The notes below the pieces were generated by a model, which ran no database searches, was not told the DNA's origin, and worked only from the letters and a program-made list of their open reading frames with translations. A program made the position numbers and the translations under genes. From Adineta vaga (taxonomy: Eukaryota; Animalia; Rotifera), in the NCBI GenBank assembly GCA_021613535.1, contig CP075493.1, forward strand, positions 11,222,001-11,286,000: a stretch of 64,000 nt of DNA, given 5' to 3'. Below are positions 12,656 through 28,200 of the stretch, one piece after another; within the stretch, counting starts at the first letter, position 1; every line of letters starts with the position of its first letter.

Positions 12656-14350
12656 ATGGACGATTTTTCAACAGAAAACAAACCAAGTCTTATACTGGAG
12701 TAAATCTTTTATTTTTGATAACGATTCAATGAGTTTCTTGGATCAATTTTAGGAATGATTCCAGAGAAAATTCCAATACTTCAGCTGGTGAACACGAATC
12801 TGGTTTTTATATTTTCGAAATCTATTTAAATCATTGATATTCTATTGTTCTAGACAAAATACTCGAAGATACATCAATTGGCACAATCGATACTTTCGAT
12901 GATCTAAATCTAGGTGAACCACTTTTACGTGGTATTTATGGATATGGTTTCGAACGACCTTCACCTGTTCAACAACGTGCTATAAAACCGTGTATTATGG
13001 GTGCGTGTCTATTGATAATATTACGAATAAGACTATCATCAAATTTACTTACGATAGGACACAATACGATTGTTCAAGCACAGTCAGGCACAGGAAAAAC
13101 TGCTTTGTATGTGATAGCTATCTTACAACGAATTGACCTAAGTATCAAAGATTGCCAAGCATTGGTTTTAGTACCAACACGAGAATTAGGTCAAAGTGTT
13201 CGTAATCGAATTAACTATTTTGTTTAATAATAACTGGAAGGTACTGTTTTTATACAATTTAGATCCGAAATGTATTCTTATCAATTGGTGAGTACATGAA
13301 TATTACCTGTCATGCCTGCATCGGTGGTACTAACATACGTGATGATTTGACTCGTCTTGAAGCAGGTGTTCAGATCGTAATTGGAACACCTGGACGAGTG
13401 AATGACACATTAAATCGATCAAAACTTCGTATGTAATCTGTTCATTACTCATAAATTCTAATTGATTTTAATTCAGGTAGTGACAATATTAAAATGCTCG
13501 TCTTGGAAGAGGCGGATGAGGTGTTAGGGCGCTGTTTTGAGGAGCAAGTTTGCGATGTGTTAAAAAAACTACCGTCGGACATTCAAATGCTCATTTTCAC
13601 TGCGACTATGCCATGTGAATTGGAGGAAATTATCTCTAAATTTATGATAAATCCTGTTCGAATTCTTGTCAAACGGTGTAATTTGACTCTTGACGGTGCT
13701 CGTCAGTTTTATATCAATATTGCACGTGAAGTAAAAAAAATGATCTTCTTCTAACATCGTCTACATCTGGATGTATTTCTTGTTCTCTATAAAAAGGAAT
13801 GGAAAATCGATACGCTCTGTGATTTACTTGAGTCAATAGACGTCAGACAAACTGTTATCTACTGCAATACACGTAAAACAGTTGATTTCGTGAACGAAAA
13901 ATTACGTGCACAAACCTTTACTGTTGGTATACTGTAAGTCGAAAATAAAATTGAGATTTTATGGGAAGATTTTTTCTTTAGCAAAACGATATGACTCAAC
14001 AAGAACGTGATGCTTATTTAAAGGAATTCCAAACAGGATCGAGTCGCTTATTGATTGCTACAGATCCATTTTCTCGCACTATTTATCCACATGCTCAGCT
14101 TTTTATTAACTATGACTTACCGAAGAGCATGGAAGCTTATATGAATCGGTAAGAAATTGAACTATCTTTAGTACATGTAATTACATAGATTGTATCGAAT
14201 TTCAGAATTGGTCATGGTGGTGCGTATGGTCGAAAAGCTACAGTATTTAATTTTATCAACGATAACGAACGAAAACATGTACAGGAAATAGAAAAGTTTT
14301 ATGATACACATATCGAAGAATTACCTGCAGATCTTTCTGATATTATTTGA
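12656..14350 (+). CDS. eIF4A-like DEAD-box protein with degenerate catalytic motifs, ~10 exons
   Basis: Spliced: [88 protein letters not shown]. The junctions checked are in frame. Confidence 0.9.
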
Positions 14351-14473
14351 AGTTTTTCGATGTTAACATATTATATACTCATTGTACCGTAATGTTTATT
14401 TCAGAATAAGAGAAAAATCACTCTAGGTGTTATTCAATCTAAGAATGCCTACATCTAGTGAAAACAGGTCAAA

Positions 14474-16173
14474 TCAGTCTTCATTCTTTTCCAATACAAA
14501 TTGCAATGTTACTGTTCCTTCAGGTATTTTATCATCGTACAATATTTGAAGGAGATCTACTATGGTTAAATCACTTCCAATTTCTGAGTTGTCATTATCA
14601 CCAATTAAAAATAATTTGTAAGAAGCAATATCTTGATTTTCGAGTCTTAATGATTCTAATGCGCACTGGATAATTTCTGAAACTTGCGTTTCTCCTTTAC
14701 AAGGTACAACTGTTGTTTGATTTCCATATGATATTGAACATTTAATTGAAGCCGTAGAAATTAATTGAAAGTCAAATTTGTTATCAGGTGCACTGAGATC
14801 TTCAAGAATAATTCCTGCACCAATTTCACAATTATCGTAATGTAAGCAACAGTAAGACTTCCTGATTTGAAATAGTTGACAGGCAATGTCTAAAATACGT
14901 TCCACACTCGTGGATAATGGACAATAGAACTGTAATGAAGAATCCTTATCTTCTGAATTCATAATTGTCACAGAAGATGGTAAAATCGTATCAATTAATT
15001 GAAAACATACAATAGGTGATGCAAAGCACGATAATGAAGTATTTTCTCCTGGAATAAAATCATTGTGATAAAGAAGTTGTTGTTTGCTATAATCAAATTC
15101 ATTTTCTTTTAGAATATCATTAATTATTGCTGATGTACGAAATCGTTGACGAACAATTTTATTTTCATCTTGGAATGCAATTGAAACAAGATAGGTTTCA
15201 TTTTCTTCTACCAAAATAAAATCTTGCGTATGTAAATGACTAATAGATTCATCAGTTCGAAAAATTCGTTGAGTATCATTTGATGTCAGATAAAGATTAC
15301 AATAATCGGGTATTTCTGTTTGTTGTAGAAGTTGTTTAACAGTCGTGTTATTGTTTGAAACAAGGATTTGCATTTCTTGTTGATTGTTATTCATGAAAAT
15401 ATTAATTGGAATGACTAATCGAAAATGAATTGTTTCATTATTATCCTCAGATCGATATGCATCAACCTGTTTACGATAACAATCTTCAGTAATTAATTGA
15501 TCATTTGAATATAAACAACAGTTATTGAGATTTAATTCCGCAAATGTTTGATTATTCAATAGATTCTGAATTGTAATAGATTTTAAAGTATGTATATGTT
15601 GAGTATTTTCTCCAAAGGTCAGATCAATATGAATGGTTTCATCGAGAGTGATACCATCAATGATTGTGTCAATATTGTCTGACAATGCAATTGATTGATC
15701 GTCATTGATAAGCGATTGCTTTTCTCGATTCCAAAAAGTACATGGTGATTCAATTTGTGGTAAAATAAATTTGCGCCATAATTCGATCTGTTCCCATTGA
15801 GCCTCTGGATGATACACAGTCGTTTTCTCTAATTCACCTTGATTGGATGTTAATGTTATTTCATAGAGAATCGTGTTCTCATCTTGCTCTTGAATATAAA
15901 TAATAATTGGAAGAGTTTTATGCATTTCATACAAATCTCCAATAATTCCATCCTGAATATATTGTCCGATTTCATCATAGAAACAATATCGATGATTCGG
16001 TGATGTTAATAGCAAATTTTGTTTTGTAATAATATCATTCATGAGAGATTGTAATGTACAATCAGGCATTGTCATATAGTTAAATCGCCGTTTATCAAAA
16101 TGAAATTCAAGAGAAATTAATGCTGATCGTTCCACAATGAAGTATTTGAGTGGTAATGGAGCTAGTGGTGGAT

Positions 16174-16205
<32 letters not shown>

Positions 16206-19200
16206 AAATCAAACAATATTCGACGATCATCAATGACAGCATAAGTATTTAAATCGTATTTTTTTTTATGAAATAGTTGTTTGAATTCTTCATGTAAGTT
16301 ATTACTGTTACATATTTTAGAATCACTTTTTCCATCGGGATGTGTAAAAACGAACTTTTGCGTTGGTTTTGTTGGTTTAACGTTTTGCATTTCTTGTTCA
16401 TTCTTTTCTAAAATGGATGTACACGAAGTAATTGGTATCGGATTTATTTGTATTTGAAATAGAGATGAATATTGTGGTGAATCTTTTTCATGAATCACGT
16501 TATAACTATCTATATTATCATCTTCGTCATCATCGGAATGATTTATGGAATATGTTGAATCCGTTCTATCAATTCCATGTAATTGACGATGATAACGATT
16601 TTTTGTAATTGTATCTTGTTCATTTGGATTTTCATCAAAATTTTCTTCCCAAAGTTGCGCTGTTTTTTCTTCAATATTTATCTTTTGTTCTTGTAAATTT
16701 GATTGAATTTGATTCAAATAAATGCTCAATGATAGATAATTTTCACATTTGATTTCTTCCGGTATTAATAGAAGTATTTCATTATCAATTCGAATATATT
16801 CCATCGTTAATTTCAACGATTCAGTTGATTGTTGTAGGAGAGTATCTTCAATGGATTTTAAATCTTGTAATAATTGGCTAATTTTTTGAATATTTAATTT
16901 GAGTGTATCGATATTTTCATCGTAATTAGTATTGATTAATTTAGATTCAAAAATCTGTTGAAGTTGAGTACTCAAATGCGTATCAATAGGAGTTCGAAGT
17001 AGATCAGGAATATTTACAAATGAATATTCAAATGTTCGTATCAATGTTCGATATACTTGTCCAATGTGATTTAAATGAGATAGTTTGAAATCGTGTACTT
17101 CGTATTGAATTAATTGTTGCATGAGATATTCATTTTCTTGAATTGATTGAATAAATTCATAGATACTTAATGATGATGCATCTGTTTGTTCTTCTTTGAT
17201 TATTGTTGCAATTTGTTTCAAAAGATTATAACCATGATAAAGTTTATCAATAAGCATATCATTTAAATGATTCCATTCATGTTCTAATGGTACAGAATAA
17301 TTTTCATCGAGATCAAATGATTTCTCATCATCATCATCATCATTCAACGTGACAAGAGAAATCAGTTTTCGTGGTTCATAAAATTGATATTTTTGAATGA
17401 TATGTTTATAGTTAATATGACATAGAAGTAGATAGGTTCGAATAATATATGATTGTATATACGTAAAATCAAAACTGAGTGGTGTATCTTCTTTAACAAA
17501 ATATTCATTTTCGAGAATCAAACTTGCAGAAGTTATTTTATTAATCCAAGAACAATCGGCATCGTTTAATGTAATTACACCAGTATTATAGAGTGCAACT
17601 TGAATGAGAGATATTTGATTTGGGAGAAGTTTTTTTATTAAAAATCGTAATATGGAACTGCTTTGATGATTGAGTCTATTGTTCTCGAATTCTTGTTCGA
17701 TTAAATCCAAGAAATTATTATGATAATCGACAAGGATACTATAGAAATATACGTAGACGAGAGGTGTTTACGAGAAAAAATATCTTTTTATACAATACCT
17801 GAGTATTCGCATAATAAGATCTTCGTCATCTGGATTTCCAATGGTAATCAAACGATGTACTGGTGTTTCGAGTGATATTTCTGTAAAATGTGTAGTTATA
17901 TCACATGGGCCCGGACGAATAAGACCATTGGTAAAAGTATGATAAGCATTGACTGCTTCAATTCCTTTCACAATGATATCCATATAATTTTGTGCTTCAT
18001 TTCGACGATGCCGACAAGTATATTTGTTCAAATGTTCTTTTGCTCGATCATGTATCTCTTTCAAGGTAATTTCCCAGACTTGTTCACGTTCAATTAATTG
18101 TGTATAGGTTTGATGAAGTAAAAGATAAAAATGACTTAATTCGTAAATATATTTTGTCATACTAAACAAATCTGTTGAATCTATGAATTGTTCTAAGATT
18201 CGCAAAGAGAGATGAGCAATTTTTGGATTGTGAATTTCTGTTTTGAAATGTGTTGTTTGAATCATCATTGGCGTTTGAGAAGTATATTGTTGCAAATTGA
18301 ATTGAATTTGTGATTGTAATTGTAATTGATCAACGTATCGTTTATATTCAGGTAACCGTTCATGAATGTTATAGAATACTTCATTCTGATAATTAAGTTC
18401 TGCTTGTACTTTAGAAGAGAAGTCTCTATAAAGAGGTTTTATCCAAGAATGTTCCTGTTGACCTGTGAGATATGCCATTCGTTCAAAACAACAATTGAGT
18501 AAGATACAAGCATCATCTTGATTTGAATTTATCGCTAAGAAATTGAAGACTGATAATAATCGAGCACGAACAAAATGGCACACTTTTGCGCGAAGACTAT
18601 CACCAGCCATGTGACAATCTGCCTGTCTATCTGCAATAGCGTTTGGTGATAGAATAGGACCATACAAATTTTGGACAGATTCTTCAAATAGTAACAAATG
18701 CCAAGCCTATATTAATGATAATTAAGGGTGGAAAACCAGATTATAGTGAAAATACAATAGCTTACCAGTGCACCAAACGTTGAAAAATAAACTGCATACA
18801 CGGCCGGAACTTTCAATTGATTGTCGTGATCATTGCCTATATATTGAGTAAGTTCACCAGTCACTGAAATGATACAACCACAGTCGTAATGAATAGCGAA
18901 TCTATCAACTGGAGCCTGATGTGTAGATCCGAAACCTAAGGATTAACGAAACATATTTACAAAAATTCTATTAAAACTAGAAATAACTGTGAATAAAAAC
19001 TTACCAAATGTACCTTCGATTGATAATGGTTCAAATGCAAATGTCCAGAGAAAACTTTCCTTTCCGCCTTTGATAATCATAGCCAATAAATTAACTAGAC
19101 AATGACGTATACATAATTCATCTGCTGCTTCACAATCTAGCCGAAACAAATGATTGAGATAATTAAAATCGATCGTATTAGTTCGTTGAGGATAACCAAT

Positions 19201-22200: not shown

Positions 22201-25200
22201 AGAAAAATAATTGTTAGCATAAAAGTTTCCAAATTCAATTAAACTTACAAGATTTAGAATTTCTATCATATCATCGATCTTTTCATTGAATCCGTTGTTC
22301 TTCTGTCTACTAAACAATTGATATTTGGATGCTTTATTTATTCCAACAACATAAGGTGATGTTCGTGTATATATCATTATTTTAGTAGTTGTAATAAAAT
22401 TCATTTCTATAGGTCTGTCAGCTGTTGTTCTATGCGTTGGACCATTGTCATCGGATGGCTTCTGTATAAGTTCTCGAACAAAGTTTTCTATATTGAAATG
22501 TTCTTGATATTGAAAGTAATTCTTAAATAATGCTTCAGCAAATTTATCTTCAAATGTCGGTAATTTGAATATGATTGATTCAGGGGAAGCGATTTGTATC
22601 AATTTCGATAAAATCAAACGTAAAAGACATAGTTGTTTATCTGTTTGATTTTGTTCAATGAAATGTTTCGTTTTGAAATTTAATTGAGTATAAATTCGAT
22701 GAATATTTGAAATGGAACATTGTCGATCGACATCAGTTTCAATCACTGATGATAGACATGAATAGAGCGTATTTTCATTCATTCCATATAGATATTGTTG
22801 ACCGAAATGTTTAATAAATGAGTGCATTTTACTTTCAACACTTTTCATTATATTTCGTTCTTCATTAGAAAGACGTTCGAATTGAATACGATAGAAATCA
22901 ACGATACTCAATGAATATTTCTGAAATCGACTCAAGAATGGTGCTGGTATTTCATTGAATTCATGTCGATTTACATGTACGATACATTGAAAATTATCGT
23001 GCACGACAACATCAACTGTTTTTGATCCAATGGCAACCTTCGAAAAGATTCTTCTTATATCACCCGTAGCCATGATTGAAAAATTCTGATTAAAAACATC
23101 ATAAAGTGAACCATGTATACGTCCTGTATTAACCATTAAGATTGTTCTTCCTGCTTCCATACATAATTTAATTGTCGATAACATTTCAACATTTTTCAAT
23201 TCATTATTCATATCATCGGAGAAATCTGACATTCGAAAAACTGTTGTTTGCTTAGGATCAATGATACCTGTTTGAAATAGCAGACGAACAGCACTTTCAT
23301 CATCTGATTCATCAATAATTAATTTATAACGACCATACAATCGTCGTTGTATTGATTCAAGTTTCATTGAATCTTGAAGAATAGTGATTACATCACGGTA
23401 GACATCATGTTGTTGTCGTCCTTTCGATAATATTTCAAAATCAGGACGTTTTTCTTGCACAGCTTTGAAAAATATGTCAACTACTTTGTCAAACTCTTTG
23501 CTACTAATTCCATTGAAATTATTTTCCAATGCATGCAATAAACTTTCCGGTCGAATTGTGTCGAGAACAACATCTTGCTGATCTGTTGAAGTTGATCGTA
23601 ATTCAAAACGGAGTTCACGTAACATATAAATAAAATCACGATCGTGAAATATCTTTGGAATATTGGGACATTGTAAAAGCCGACGATAGCCATGACACAA
23701 ACCAGTAATGATGTCAACTAAATGAGGATGTGTTGTTTCTTTATTTTTTAAACCAAGACAACCATAAGCTAAAACTTCTTGATCGTCTTCTGATGGAAGT
23801 GATCGATAGATACAAGTCATTCGATTGGCATTTGCAGCATCAAATGCTTTATTGGCGATTGCTACAAATGCTACTTGACATTCATCTAAATATTGATGTA
23901 ATACTTTTAATATCATTTTCTTTTCATCGGGCAAGGAAGCTTCATCCAAAAATACAACCTAAATATTGATTTATTCTAATTGAAAATGAGTATAAGAAAA
24001 GCTTACACATCGAGTGTTCATGCGATTCTGTTGATAATGCTGTTCACGTTTAATAGCTCGTTCGAATACGGATGCAATATCATTCGATGATGTGTATTTC
24101 GAACCAAGACAAAAGAATGGATCTACTGCTGGTAGTTTTTTACAGAACTCAGTTTTTGATAATTGTGGACCTTGAAGATTCTGTAATACGATTTGGAATG
24201 AAAGAGTTTTTGATTGTCCTACAAATTAAATCCAATAAGTTTACTATTAATTAAATCGTTCATTATTTAAGACTAACCTGGTGCACCAATAATGCACAAA
24301 GGCATTCGAGTGACAACACTTATAGTTATTGCAAAAATATGTTCGCGAATCTTCGATAGAGAAAAATTAATAAGGATAATCATGAACAAATATAGATGAG
24401 ATACATACGGCTTGGTTAATGGCAACACCTGTTGGAATGACAAAATTGGTGGTATTAACAAAATTTTCTAGTTCTTCTTGAATGATTCTTGCAAATCTTG
24501 ATAGACTTTTAGATAATAATTTAGCAAATTCTTCTCGTGAAGGTGTTTTTTGATCTCCTCGTTTCTTATTATCTTCATCTGTCGGTAGTCGAAAATAGTA
24601 GATTAATGCTAGTGATAACGCGATACATCGATCAAGATCAGGTTCTTCTTCTTCGTCTTTCATACTCTCATAGAAATATTCGATGAGTGTAAAACATCGT
24701 TGAATTTCTCTTTGTGATACTGTATTTTTACCTAATTTTTCTTCACAAAATGCTTGTGCAGCTAGAATTGCTTCGATTAGTTTCCCTTGTAAATATATGC
24801 GTAATTCTGGTTCCATTTCAAAACTTAAGTCAAATTTTGTTACTTTTTGTGTAATATAATCATGCAATGTTCTTGGTTCTAAAGAACCATACGATACTTT
24901 CAAATGTTCTAGTGATTCTGGTAGTTTATGAACGACATAATCTATACGATGAACAAGATTGTCTTGATTATCTTTGTCTAATGCTGGATTGATTGCAGCC
25001 GTAAAGAAAATGTTTTCTGGTATATTTTCACCTTGTAATGTTCTATCGGTAAATATTTCTTTAAAAAGTCCAAGACATGATGATGTATTTACTTCATCGA
25101 AAAAGACTACCAATTTAATATCTTTCCACTTATCTGCTAATTTTGATATTGGCGTGATAAACTCTTTAATATCTTGTTCAGTGACACCTGGATGAATCAG

Positions 25201-28200
25201 CATTCGATAGAATACTGATTTGACATGTGAATATGAAAGATATTCCTCTAGAATTTTTATAGATGTTCGTATGCTCAACGGACCATTTTCGATTAAATCG
25301 TCTAACTCAGAACTACCTTCGATTAAAGGTAAACTAGCCAACTCAGATGTTACATATTTACGCATCGCAATCAATAATCGTTTAGTAGTTGATGCGCAGT
25401 TTTTCTGCACTACGCTTAGAATAGTTCGCCAGATGAATACAAACATTTTAGAATCGTTTTTTGACTCTGAAAACGAAGTTTTAAATTGTGTTAGTAATTC
25501 GAGATTCATTCCATCTATAGATTGTTCTTCAGCTGTATCTTCAAGTAGATTTGAGAACTGATCGTTGAATCGGATTCGATTTTGTTCATTACAAAATGCA
25601 CGAAGACGACGAATTCCTAGGGATCGTGTAGGTGACGAAGGTCTACTACTTTGATCATCTTCATCTTCATCGCTAGTATACTCTCGATTGAGTTCTCGAA
25701 TTTTATTATCAGCTTCATCATCATCATCATCCTGACTATATTCGTGATCTTCGTCGATATCATCTTTCTGGGTATCTTCTTCATCAGTATTCATTAATTT
25801 TGGTTTCAAATGCTCAAGTATTTCATTCAAGAGATTTGGCTGTTTTTCAAGAATTTTCGTGAAGATGAATCCAGACATCCATACATTAGCGCGTTCCAGT
25901 ATTTGTTTGAGAAAAATAGTTTGATCGTAACTATGTTGAATATTTGCATTTACCAATAATGAATAGAATTTGAGTAAATATGTTTTTCCAATTCCTGTAT
26001 CACCTTCAATTATCAACGGGAGACTTGTTAATTTTCGTTCATGAATATGAAAAAGTTTATAAGCAAAGTTTTCTGTGAGAATAAATTTCATTTGATTCAT
26101 AATCTGTTCACATGTTTCATATTTAGTATTGACAAGCCAGGATAGACATTCGAGAAAACGATTTCTATTTAAGAACTCTACTCTTGTCAATGGATCCTTA
26201 TCTTTCCATAAAGTTTTTATTGTCGCGGGCACTTCATCCCAATTGTTATGCAACAAATGTAATGAAAAGTCAGGATCATAAACAAGATACACACGTGGAT
26301 AGTTATCATCATGAAAACTGATCTGACAAAGTGCCTTAGCTTCTTGTATCATTTGAGTCATGGCTGTTGAACCAAGATGTGGGGTGGTTTCGTTTAAAAT
26401 GTAAAAAGGATTAATAAAAAATCGAACACGACGATAGAGAAATTTTGTGAATGACACGTCATATATTTTATTTCGTTGTCCGTACGGTGAGCATTTGTCT
26501 ATGCAATCGTATATATGTTGACGGCATTCATTCTCGTCATGTAGCGTGTCAAACTCGTATGGCGAACAGAATCGTGTCGTTGGACGACGATCAATCGTAT
26601 TGTTTGAATATGCTTTAAGAAATCGCGCAACTAATTCTTCTTCTTCTCCAATATATAACTGATAATCTTCATTCGTGATTGTTTCTATTGATGATCGAGC
26701 AACTATAGAAACTATTGGTAATATATAATTCAAATTCTCCTCTAATGACGCATTGTATTTTGTTGAATATGGAATCTCAATGAAAAACGTCCAGCTAGTC
26801 ATATTTGGCAAAGCAAATGTTAGACCACTCGTTGGATCAATAAGTGAACCGCATACGAATAAGGAAAATAAGGTGCGATTCAAGTCATCAAATGGAGCAT
26901 AGTTGTATATATTAATGTAAACAGTTGCTTGACTACCGCGTATTGTTGAATCATATGAAATGAGTGAACTTATAAAGGATGATAAGCTTAATTTATCGTT
27001 GATACTAAAGCGTAATGTTTCTTCGGTCATGTACACTTTATTCACTCGATGTGTTTTACCTAAAAGTAGAAAACAAAATCAAGTAAAAGCGAAATAAGTT
27101 AATATCATTACCAGTTCCTTGTTTTCCACAAATGATGTACATTTCCGAAGGAAGTCGATCAGTTTTCTCGAACAGTTGTGTCAATTGCGTATGAGTTTTT
27201 GAGACATTTCGATAATCGGATGGTACATGAAAGAATTTCAATCCTCTTCGATATGTTGTTAATTCTCGAGAAAAATAATAGACGACTCCATGTGATTCTC
27301 TACAATTTGTTAGTAAATCTTGTTCATTCAATAGTACTTCACGAAGACGAAAATGCATTTTATCAATATCTAATATAACGAAAATCATATTGGCAAATGT
27401 TCGGATACGTGAAAAGAATAAATGAATATCATCTTCATTGACTGTTGAACACCATAAAATTTGAGATGCTGATGGTAATCGATCATTGAATAGATTTAAT
27501 AGAATACAAAACATTTCTAAATCAAACGTGCACTCAAATAGTTTCGTTTTCGATGTATCAGATTTTGGATTTAATGTGATAAGATACTGTTGACTTTCAT
27601 TACTTGTTACATTCTTATATATTGTTTGATTTGATTCCTTCAAAAATTCATTGAGAAAATAATCGAGATATTTAAGTGATCCATCGACACTAACATCATG
27701 TGTCAATGTATTATTATCGTATATCGATGATACTGAATCTTCAAATGGTTCACTTTCACTAATAGGTAATGAACGTAAATAATAGAGAAGAGAATATTGA
27801 GTACACTTGAACGCATTTGCATCACCATCGTCTTTTTCTTTCTCATATGAATATAACTTTTCAAATAGTTCAAGTTTAATTCGATAATTGGATTTTGAAT
27901 TTGTCAGTAAAATAATCATATTCATAATTTGTCGATTGGAGAACAATTTCAACAGGTAGCTTTTAGTTCTCCATTCTTGTAATCTATCAATCCAATCGTT
28001 GTATTCTCTTTCAAGTCGTTCCCAAGCATCTTTAAAACATTTTGTCCGAGATTGAATCATATCTTTTAGTTCTGTTTGATCTATGTCTTGATTTTCTTGC
28101 GATGTAAGTAATACCGGATTAATTGGATCTAGTCAAAGTAATTTAGAATATTAGTAGATGATAATTTTTTTAATATCTCTTACTTTTTGAACTATAAATT

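What the first reader, a model, noticed from the sequence alone, without database searches (positions are those of the whole stretch)
14477..16365. About eight tandem, divergent ubiquitin-like (beta-grasp) units at the C-terminus of the RNF213-like protein
Seen: the last ~630 aa divide into ~70-90-aa units, each with a pattern of two strands, [TS]-[VIL]-x-x-[IL]-[LI] helix, strands, then an F-x-L strand. Examples: IPINIFMNNNQQEMQILVSNNNTTVKQLLQQ; SSVTIMNSEDKDSSLQFYCPLSTSVERILDIACQLF; IKCSISYGNQTTVVPCKGETQVSEIIQCALESLRL. There is no terminal GG. Vertebrate RNF213 has no such tail. Inference: a genetically encoded linear poly-Ubl that could mimic a ubiquitin chain, recruit autophagy/p97 adaptors, or act as bait for pathogen deubiquitylases.
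Basis: inference. Interest (0 to 1): 0.8.

Follow-up and report, generated by a model that had tools for sequence, protein, structure and literature searches.

The report
Eight-domain ubiquitin-like tail on rotifer RNF213-like giant
The last 630 amino acids of a giant RNF213-like ATPase gene of a bdelloid rotifer really are eight head-to-tail, very diverged, non-conjugatable ubiquitin-fold domains; this fixed module is kept in all its relatives and has not been described on any RNF213 relative, and its function is still inferred.

Summary
Observation confirmed.

- **Fold:** AlphaFold2 with a 75-sequence alignment gives pLDDT 93.6 and pTM 0.77, with eight consecutive beta-beta-alpha-beta-beta-(3-10)-beta units of 71-91 aa.
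- **Structure matches:** Foldseek's best hits are linear tetra-ubiquitin (E 5e-15) and the five-UBL tail of USP7. A separate model of units 1-4 again hits tetra-ubiquitin over its full length (E 2e-12). Units 2, 7 and 8 superpose on SUMO, ubiquitin and a bacterial Ubl at Z 10.5-12.8, rmsd 1.4-1.9 Å.
- **Sequence:** repeats are almost invisible. There are no Pfam, PDB or self-BLAST hits, and only units 7/8 reach 90% by profile comparison.
- **Conservation:** all full-length homologues keep exactly eight units. None ends in GG. All named ones are bdelloid rotifers.

The mimicry idea is untested and partly contradicted: no GG/LRGG junctions, every unit distinct, and a confidently modelled domain arrangement. 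My best reading is a structured acidic docking or assembly arm, like the USP7 tail.

The scan found the same architecture before on a paralogue elsewhere in this genome (s1-494377). I reached the same conclusion independently.

The parts
16124..16366 (-). Ubl unit 1 (tail residues 1-81). It has a variable 15-22 aa loop between strands 4 and 5, which carries a run of ten Thr in this copy only.
   Evidence: DSSP of AF2 models; tetra-ubiquitin full-length Foldseek alignment of units 1-4; loop alignment
15875..16123 (-). Ubl unit 2 (residues 82-164), SUMO-like, with a second helix before strand 5
   Evidence: VIA-align: SUMO2 7zjv_B Z 10.5, rmsd 1.9 Å, 73 aligned, 20% identity, model range 83-164
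15641..15874 (-). Ubl unit 3 (residues 165-242)
   Evidence: DSSP pattern; tetra-Ub alignment; many paralogues have an intron near residue 177-182
15413..15640 (-). Ubl unit 4 (residues 243-318), with extra short helices. Its last strand runs on into the first strand of unit 5.
   Evidence: DSSP; tetra-Ub alignment; hhalign U2-U4 47%, in register
15200..15412 (-). Ubl unit 5 (residues 319-389)
   Evidence: DSSP. The full-model tetra-Ub hit (E 4.7e-15) is better than the hit of units 1-4 alone, so it must lie on a four-unit stretch that includes unit 5 (inference).
14987..15199 (-). Ubl unit 6 (residues 390-460)
   Evidence: DSSP; not superposed singly
14750..14986 (-). Ubl unit 7 (residues 461-539), the most ubiquitin-like unit
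   Evidence: VIA-align: ubiquitin, SUMO and FAT10 at Z 11.7-12.8, rmsd 1.4-1.8 Å over 72-80 residues; hhalign to an alignment of this genome's own PF00240 domains 60%, full length
14477..14749 (-). Ubl unit 8 (residues 540-630). It ends ...LEKNED with no GG, followed by the TGA stop at 14474-14476.
   Evidence: VIA-align: bacterial Ubl 8tyx_A Z 12.3, rmsd 1.8 Å, 79 aligned; hhalign U7-U8 90%; C-termini of homologues
16367..16633 (-). Acidic, low-complexity linker of about 90 aa between the conserved upstream domain and the Ubl array (taken as disordered from its sequence; not modelled)
   Evidence: translation; poorly conserved columns in A3; fastest-changing part in a paralogue pair
16634..17738 (-). 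Conserved domain in the same last exon, upstream of the linker (about 360 aa). It has no PDB or Pfam match. It may correspond to the RNF213 CTD, but this is untested.
   Evidence: A3 alignment, mean column identity 37%; profile search of the PDB empty; Pfam empty
17739..17798 (-). Predicted 60-nt GT..AG intron with an in-frame TAA. It joins the last exon in frame to the upstream ORF. No RNA contig covers it.
   Evidence: sequence reading; no coverage at 17401-17800
14395..14400 (-). AATAAA polyadenylation signal, about 75 nt after the stop
   Evidence: sequence
24370..27045 (-). Exon of the same gene carrying the RNF213-type AAA unit (Walker A GDTGIGKT, Walker B FFDEVN)
   Evidence: phmmer against the PDB: only RNF213 chains, E 9e-9

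Best explanation
The last 630 codons of the giant minus-strand gene encode eight head-to-tail ubiquitin-fold (beta-grasp) domains joined by 0-7-residue linkers. They cannot be conjugated, because there is no C-terminal GG. They form one fixed, co-evolving eight-unit module that is conserved in a bdelloid-rotifer family of RNF213-like AAA giants.

The module is strongly acidic and poor in lysine. It hangs on an acidic linker of about 90 aa behind a conserved domain.

Most likely it works as a structured docking or assembly arm. In that reading it resembles the five-UBL HUBL tail of USP7 or the Ubl domains carried by E3 ligases such as parkin, HOIL-1L and UHRF1. It would bind partner proteins, substrates or the enzyme's own body through unit-specific surfaces, rather than act as a literal copy of a ubiquitin chain.

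Shown: fold, number of units, order, conservation, lack of GG. Inferred: the binding function and all partners.
For: **Fold**
- AF2 pLDDT 93.6 and pTM 0.77 for the 630 aa; 93.2 and 0.85 for units 1-4.
- Foldseek best hits are linear tetra-Ub (E 4.7e-15 and 1.6e-12). E-values are graded from di- to tri- to tetra-Ub. USP7 HUBL scores E about 1e-12 over about 660 columns.
- VIA Z 10.5-12.8 with rmsd 1.4-1.9 Å for units 2, 7 and 8.

**One fixed module**
- Every full-length homologue (26-50% identical) has all eight units with near-constant lengths.
- Homologues align colinearly, never in a shifted register.
- Units are not recognisably similar to each other apart from U7/U8.

**Defined arrangement**
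- High pTM, short linkers, and a continuous strand 312-325 across units 4/5.

**Not a modifier**
- No GG anywhere at the C-termini.
- Net charge about -45, with 28 Lys in 630 aa.

**Part of the giant**
- The same layout, with an AAA exon 8-12 kb upstream of the tail, recurs in the paralogues on contigs 2 and 3.
- A Rotaria gene model of 2726 aa carries the tail at its C-end.
- RNA-like contigs cover pieces of the tail.
Against: - No partner, binding surface or intramolecular contact was shown. The one complex prediction I tried did not complete.
- TM-scores to USP7 HUBL are low (0.12-0.14), so the spatial arrangement is not HUBL's.
- I had no coordinates or PAE. 'Rigid' therefore rests on pTM alone.
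- Six of eight units keep consecutive hydrophobic residues in strand 3, where Ub has L43-I44-F45. An I44-like contact surface for ubiquitin-binding domains is not excluded.
- Short-term pN/pS is near 1, from small counts. This could also mean relaxed constraint.
- Exon connectivity to the AAA part is predicted, not read from RNA.
Confidence: 0.55

Rival explanations
1. Chain mimic or built-in 'ISGylation'. The array imitates a poly-ubiquitin or ISG15-type signal. It would either recruit readers of ubiquitin or Ubl (autophagy receptors, p97 adaptors), or drive self-assembly of the giant in cis. In cis it would replace the ISG15 modification that mammalian RNF213 needs for oligomerisation.
For: - Linear poly-Ub chains are the best structural matches, and the 3-7-residue linkers resemble the four-residue tail between Ub units.
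- Precedent: the non-conjugatable tandem Ubl of human OASL is thought to mimic poly-Ub for RIG-I (PMC8764230).
- Mammalian RNF213 binds ISG15, and its own ISGylation is needed for oligomerisation (PMC8486878).
- Strand 3 keeps consecutive hydrophobic residues in 6 of 8 units.
Against: - Identity to Ub or SUMO is 8-20%, and PF00240 is not detected.
- In unit 7, Ub L8 and I44 align with Ser and His, and those positions vary in the family.
- The outer face of strand 5 is polar in 6 of 8 units.
- The units are all different and their number is fixed, which is not what valency-based mimicry needs.
- The confident inter-domain geometry differs from di- and tetra-Ub crystal forms (rmsd 7-25 Å).
Confidence: 0.2
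2. Fast-evolving recognition module. The tail is the variable, target-binding end of an immune-type E3/AAA machine. It would be comparable to SPRY or LRR ends of other restriction factors and would diversify among paralogues to follow pathogen ligands or antagonists.
For: - There are at least five paralogous tails in this genome, only 27-36% identical to this one.
- The tail is somewhat more diverged than the adjacent domain: 49/36/33/30% against 59/40/41/35% for the same homologues.
- pN/pS is about 1.1 (21 non-synonymous: 5 synonymous) between this copy and RNA-like contigs, and 0.75 (9:3) in a paralogue pair.
- Vertebrate RNF213 is an antimicrobial E3 (PMC8486878).
Against: - Counts are small.
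- The upstream domain shows a similar ratio (3:1), so the signal is not specific to the tail.
- No hypervariable patch was mapped.
- An immune role of the rotifer proteins is assumed, not shown.
Confidence: 0.15
3. Decoy substrate for pathogen deubiquitylases or Ubl proteases.
For: Only the general resemblance to linear Ub chains and ISG15, which viral and bacterial proteases recognise (hits).
Against: No GG or LRGG at any junction or at the C-terminus. Linkers are ERSA, EQDENT, DET, EENET, DTILPSS and STAS. The recognition tail those proteases need is absent.
Confidence: 0.04
4. Passive spacer or rod with no specific binding role, or a decaying appendage.
For: Near-neutral short-term pN/pS. 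No conserved sequence motif shared with known binding sites.
Against: - Eight units with near-constant lengths are kept across three bdelloid families and across paralogues of 26-50% identity.
- pLDDT is very high, driven by a coherent alignment.
- The frame is intact in at least three other copies in this genome.
Confidence: 0.06

Closest known systems
USP7/HAUSP C-terminal HUBL (five tandem UBL domains; PDB 2ylm, 4z97, 5c56)
   Same: A C-terminal, non-conjugatable array of diverged ubiquitin-fold domains on an enzyme of the ubiquitin system. Units are unlike each other in sequence. Foldseek E about 1e-12 over about 660 columns. It is the natural model for a docking and regulating arm.
   Different: Eight units rather than five. 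No USP domain. TM-scores of only 0.12-0.14, so the spatial arrangement differs. No sequence similarity. HUBL's activating C-terminal peptide and its substrate-binding patches were not looked for or found here.
Linear (M1-linked) polyubiquitin and the polyubiquitin precursor
   Same: Head-to-tail beta-grasp units of about 76 aa with very short linkers. Best Foldseek matches: tetra-Ub E 4.7e-15 for the whole tail and 1.6e-12 for units 1-4.
   Different: Units are 8-20% identical to Ub and all different from one another. No GG-M junctions and no terminal GG. PF00240 is not detected. AF2 places the domains confidently relative to each other.
Immune di-Ubl proteins: ISG15, FAT10 and the C-terminal tandem Ubl of OASL
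   Same: Tandem Ubl domains in antimicrobial contexts. Human OASL's tail is non-conjugatable and thought to mimic poly-Ub (PMC8764230). All appear among the Foldseek hits.
   Different: Two units, not eight. ISG15, FAT10 and avian OASL carry LRLRGG-type ends and are conjugated. None is fused to an AAA giant.
Vertebrate RNF213 (mysterin)
   Same: The host protein has an RNF213-type AAA unit with aligned Walker A and B motifs. The distance from that unit to the start of the tail (about 2,800 codons including introns) is about the length of the rest of human RNF213.
   Different: RNF213 ends in a bilobal alpha-helical CTD, and no Ubl domain is described (PMC7311170). The last exon here has no sequence match to RNF213. 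The RING and RZ status of the rotifer protein was not examined here.

Membership tests
Ubiquitin-like beta-grasp fold (structural superfamily) | Secondary-structure order beta-beta-alpha-beta-beta-(3-10)-beta in about 70-90 residues | tested here: met
   All eight units show it in two independent AF2 models
Ubiquitin-like beta-grasp fold (structural superfamily) | Full-domain superposition on solved Ub or Ubl structures, with Z well above background and low rmsd | tested here: met
   Unit 7 Z 11.7-12.8, unit 8 Z 12.3, unit 2 Z 10.5, rmsd 1.4-1.9 Å. Units 1, 3, 4, 5 and 6 rest only on the four-unit alignments to tetra-Ub.
Pfam ubiquitin family PF00240 (sequence family) | Match to the family profile above its cut-off | tested here: not met
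   No Pfam hit at E<=0.01. hhalign to an alignment of this genome's own PF00240 domains gives 60% for unit 7 and <=3% for the others.
Conjugatable Ubl modifiers (Ub, SUMO, NEDD8, ISG15, FAT10) | C-terminal di-glycine, exposed or exposable by processing | tested here: not met
   The protein ends ...LEKNED. Homologues end in [FL]xLxKKx[DE]-type tails, none with GG. No GG at unit junctions.
Linear polyubiquitin mimic | Conserved L8-I44-H68-V70 hydrophobic patch on the units | tested here: inconclusive
   In unit 7, L8 aligns with S and I44 with H, and both positions vary. The outer face of strand 5 is polar in 6 of 8 units, but strand 3 has consecutive hydrophobic residues in 6 of 8. Without coordinates, exposure could not be judged.
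USP7-type HUBL | Five UBLs in a 2-1-2 arrangement following a USP catalytic domain | tested here: not met
   Eight units, no USP domain, TM 0.12-0.14 to HUBL chains. It is a functional analogy only.
RNF213 family (host protein) | RNF213-type AAA unit with Walker A and B motifs | tested here: met
   Only RNF213 chains are hit in the PDB, E 9e-9. GDTGIGKT aligns with GETGCGKT, and FFDEVNT with FFDEANT.
RNF213 family (host protein) | E3 module (RING, RZ finger) and helical CTD | not tested
   Outside this finding. A profile of the 448 aa before the tail hits nothing in the PDB.

The most novel reading that the evidence does not exclude
An RNF213-like antimicrobial machine that carries its own permanent Ubl 'modification'. 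In an animal without ISG15, the encoded eight-Ubl tail would do in cis what ISGylation of RNF213 does in mammals. It would nucleate oligomerisation or adaptor recruitment on the target surface, so the enzyme brings a ready-made chain-like signal to whatever it binds.
Probability: 0.12. Interest if true: 0.8.

Novelty: new variant of a known kind. Interest (0 to 1): 0.6.

Why it matters
Tandem Ubl arrays and E3-borne Ubl domains are known. An invariant eight-domain, non-conjugatable Ubl array appended to an RNF213-type AAA giant has not been described. Two full-text searches, for RNF213 with rotifers and for RNF213 orthologues with ubiquitin-like domains, found nothing relevant, and the RNF213 structure paper mentions no Ubl.

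It is the longest encoded array of distinct Ubl domains I could compare with: USP7 has five, and ISG15, FAT10 and OASL have two. It sits on a protein family whose mammalian member is a broad antimicrobial E3 that reads ISG15.

It offers a tractable test of how ubiquitin-fold domains are reused as scaffolds or as signals, because the tail is a soluble-looking 630-aa module predicted with very high confidence. It also marks a bdelloid-specific, multi-copy, fast-diverging family of giants that is a candidate for rotifer cell-autonomous immunity.

Tried and rejected
- **Sequence-level repeat detection.** Self-BLAST found nothing. The self-mode of hhalign returned no rows. Window-by-window and unit-by-unit hhalign gave only U7-U8 (about 90%), U7-Ub (60%) and U2-U4 (47%).
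- **Family and structure searches by sequence.** Pfam on nine ORF pieces of the gene gave only two sub-threshold hits. PDB sequence searches on the last exon, the exon before it, a profile of the 448 aa before the tail, and a 2726-aa Rotaria model were all empty.
- **A supposed conserved 'NPPLP' motif** in the unit-1 loop was an artefact of sparsely filled columns. The loop is variable, and the Thr run is private to this copy.
- **ESM Atlas.** The feature search (scores <=0.84, leads only) and the shape search (TM 0.26-0.37) gave only generic multi-Ubl proteins.
- **Complex prediction.** I submitted the conserved upstream domain against the tail five times, and the tool answered 'busy' every time. 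There is no result, and it counts neither for nor against.
- **RNA evidence.** Only contigs of runs guessed to be RNA were available. They are spliced at a neighbouring intron (14148-14204) and cover pieces of the tail at low depth. They do not cover the introns at 17739-17798 or around 18700-18940, so exon linkage stays predicted.
- **DUB-bait idea.** Rejected for lack of any GG or LRGG.
- **Single-unit superposition** of units 1, 3, 4, 5 and 6 was not possible.
Full report
**Context**

The window is G000:C1:11222001-11286000 of a 100.8-Mb genome in six contigs. It is AT-rich (about 31% GC) with short introns.

On the minus strand, a row of long ORFs separated by short gaps runs from about 32.3 kb down to 14474. 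One of them (24370-27045) matches only RNF213 chains in the PDB (E 9e-9). The Walker A and Walker B motifs are aligned: GDTGIGKT with GETGCGKT, and FFDEVNT with FFDEANT.

The last ORF (17710-14474, 1078 codons) ends at a TGA, followed 75 nt later by AATAAA. A 60-nt GT..AG intron (17798-17739) that holds an in-frame TAA would join it in frame to the ORF upstream. This junction is predicted, not read from RNA.

**The observation**

By sequence alone nothing is visible:
- no Pfam family;
- no PDB sequence match;
- no self-BLAST repeat.

A search of 1.84 billion representative proteins found 129 relatives (94 at E<=1e-10). Nearly all match in a single colinear stretch, and no best stretch lies in a shifted register.

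With a 75-sequence alignment (A1), AlphaFold2 gave a model with mean pLDDT 93.6 and pTM 0.77. Its DSSP string is eight consecutive copies of strand-strand-helix-strand-strand-(short helix)-strand:

| Unit | Residues |
|---|---|
| 1 | 2-79 |
| 2 | 84-161 |
| 3 | 168-240 |
| 4 | 244-318 |
| 5 | 319-387 |
| 6 | 391-458 |
| 7 | 464-537 |
| 8 | 541-627 |

First-helix starts are 72-86 residues apart. It marks the N-cap of helix 1 in four units.

**Fold**

- Foldseek against the PDB ranks linear tetra-ubiquitin first (7yui_A, E 4.7e-15, 327 columns). Next come other tetra-Ub chains, the five-UBL tail of USP7 (E about 1e-12, about 660 columns), tri-Ub (about 1e-10), di-Ub (about 1e-7), and ISG15, FAT10 and the OASL di-Ubl (about 1e-6).
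- VIA-align puts unit 7 (462-540) on ubiquitin, SUMO, FAT10 and ISG15 at Z 11.7-12.8 with rmsd 1.4-1.8 Å over 72-80 residues. It puts unit 8 (539-630) on a bacterial Ubl at Z 12.3, rmsd 1.8 Å.
- One domain fills such lists, so I folded units 1-4 alone (A2; pLDDT 93.2, pTM 0.85, same DSSP). Foldseek again puts tetra-Ub first, over 335 columns for a 322-residue query and a 305-residue target (E 1.6e-12). Tri-Ub scores about 1e-6 and di-Ub about 1e-5. This gradient is what four additive Ub-like units would give.
- VIA places unit 2 (83-164) on SUMO2 at Z 10.5, rmsd 1.9 Å, 20% identity.
- The tetra-Ub hit of the whole tail is better than that of units 1-4 alone. It must therefore lie on another four-unit stretch, and every such stretch contains unit 5 (inference).
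- Units 1, 3, 4, 5 and 6 were not superposed singly.

**Sequence periodicity**

Profile-profile comparison of the eight unit sub-alignments gives the following:
- U7-U8 90%, full length and in register;
- U7 against an alignment of twenty PF00240 domains from this genome, 60%, full length;
- U2-U4 47%;
- everything else at or below about 11%.

The repeat is therefore ancient. The units are more like their counterparts in other proteins than like each other.

**Conservation and range**

- Every homologue that spans the tail has all eight units. Lengths are U1 67-81 (one outlier at 87), U2 73-88, U3 73-101, U4 76-85, U5 70-75, U6 64-82, U7 76-80 and U8 82-103.
- None ends in GG. The ends follow [FL]xLxKKx[DE].
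- The junction peptides here are ERSA, EQDENT, DET, none, EENET, DTILPSS and STAS.
- This genome holds at least four further tail copies, on contigs 2, 3 (two) and 5, and a lone unit-8 fragment. They are 27-36% identical to this one. One of the contig-3 copies has in-frame stops.
- On contigs 2 and 3, an AAA exon 46-65% identical to ours lies 8-12 kb upstream of the tail, as it does here.
- A Rotaria magnacalcarata gene model of 2726 aa carries the tail at residues 2104-2726, its very end.
- Named relatives come from Rotaria magnacalcarata, R. socialis, Rotaria sp. Silwood2 and Didymodactylos carnosus. No named relative comes from outside the bdelloids.

**Other properties**

- The tail has a net charge of about -45. 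Only unit 1 is basic. There are 28 Lys in 630 residues.
- It is preceded by an acidic low-complexity stretch of about 90 aa and a conserved domain of about 360 aa that has no PDB match even as a profile.
- The tail is a little more diverged than that domain: 49/36/33/30% against 59/40/41/35% identity for the same four homologues.
- Contigs of four public runs, guessed to be RNA, are spliced at the neighbouring gene's intron (14148-14204). They cover pieces of the tail and of the rest of the last exon at low depth, but none of the gene's own predicted introns.
- Their differences from the window inside the tail are 21 non-synonymous to 5 synonymous, a pN/pS of about 1.1.
- In a paralogue pair from two metagenomes the tail shows 9:3 (0.75) and the upstream domain 3:1.
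- These counts are small. The signal is not specific to the tail. It contrasts with the long-term retention of fold and unit number.

**How it probably works**

Shown: a fixed eight-domain Ubl module that cannot be conjugated.

Inferred: a function as a structured docking or assembly arm. The reasons are:
- AF2 is confident about relative domain positions (pTM 0.77 and 0.85);
- linkers are 0-7 residues, and one strand (312-325) runs through units 4 and 5;
- each unit has its own conserved identity;
- the closest multi-domain precedent on an enzyme of the ubiquitin system is the USP7 HUBL, although the geometry differs (TM 0.12-0.14).

Literal chain mimicry is weakened by several points:
- there are no GG junctions;
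- identity to Ub is 8-20%;
- Ser and His stand at the Ub L8 and I44 positions of unit 7;
- the outer face of strand 5 is polar in six units.

Mimicry is not excluded. Six units keep consecutive hydrophobic residues in strand 3, where Ub has L43-I44-F45. Human OASL offers a precedent for a non-conjugatable Ubl tail thought to mimic poly-Ub (PMC8764230).

Mammalian RNF213 binds ISG15 and needs its own ISGylation to oligomerise (PMC8486878). This makes a cis-encoded substitute an attractive but untested idea.

The deubiquitylase-bait idea has no support.

**Comparison with known systems, and novelty**

Mouse RNF213 ends in a bilobal alpha-helical CTD, and the structure paper does not mention a ubiquitin-like domain (PMC7311170). 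Literature searches for RNF213 with rotifers or with Ubl domains in invertebrates found nothing relevant.

I file this as a new variant of a known kind: a tandem Ubl array on a ubiquitin-system enzyme.

The scan had already reached the same structural conclusion on a paralogue on another contig (s1-494377). My result was obtained independently on this copy and agrees.

**Limits**

- No coordinates or PAE were available.
- The complex prediction did not complete.
- Exon linkage is predicted.
- The RING and RZ status of the host protein was left to the report on the whole gene.

Noticed in passing
window 14006-15143 (intron 14148-14204, + strand): Contigs of four RNA-like runs splice out a 57-nt GT..AG intron of the plus-strand neighbour (the eIF4A-like gene ending near 14350). 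They then run on without a break into the 3' end of the minus-strand giant. The two convergent genes lie about 125 nt apart and may have overlapping 3' UTRs.
   Followed up: partly
window 16162-16215: A run of ten Thr codons in the strand 4/5 loop of unit 1 is private to this copy. All homologues have a shorter, variable loop there. The reads tool flagged it as a repeat where contigs break.
   Followed up: partly
G000:C3:3688949-3690223 (L006/L007): A further tail paralogue with in-frame TGA and TAA stops and a missing middle part. It is probably a pseudogene.
   Followed up: no
G000:C2:15307649-15307879 (L008): An isolated unit-8-like fragment (90-aa open frame) lies about 10 kb downstream of the contig-2 paralogue's tail. 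It may be a remnant of a tandem duplication.
   Followed up: no
G000:C1:11169254-11169487 and G000:C6:6308354-6309232: These are more distant matches (30-39% identity) to the RNF213-type AAA exon. The first lies in a 2743-codon open frame only about 53 kb from this window. No tail copy was found next to either, so there may be tail-less RNF213-like giants in the same genome.
   Followed up: no
G000:C3:2588430-2589326: Four tandem, diverged PF00240 ubiquitin domains sit in one 363-codon frame, among 59 PF00240 matches in the genome. This rotifer has many diverged poly-Ubl genes besides true polyubiquitin.
   Followed up: no
homologues of tail residues 177-185: Many paralogues' ORFs stop or start at tail residue 177-185, early in unit 3. 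This points to an intron there in most family members that this copy lacks.
   Followed up: no
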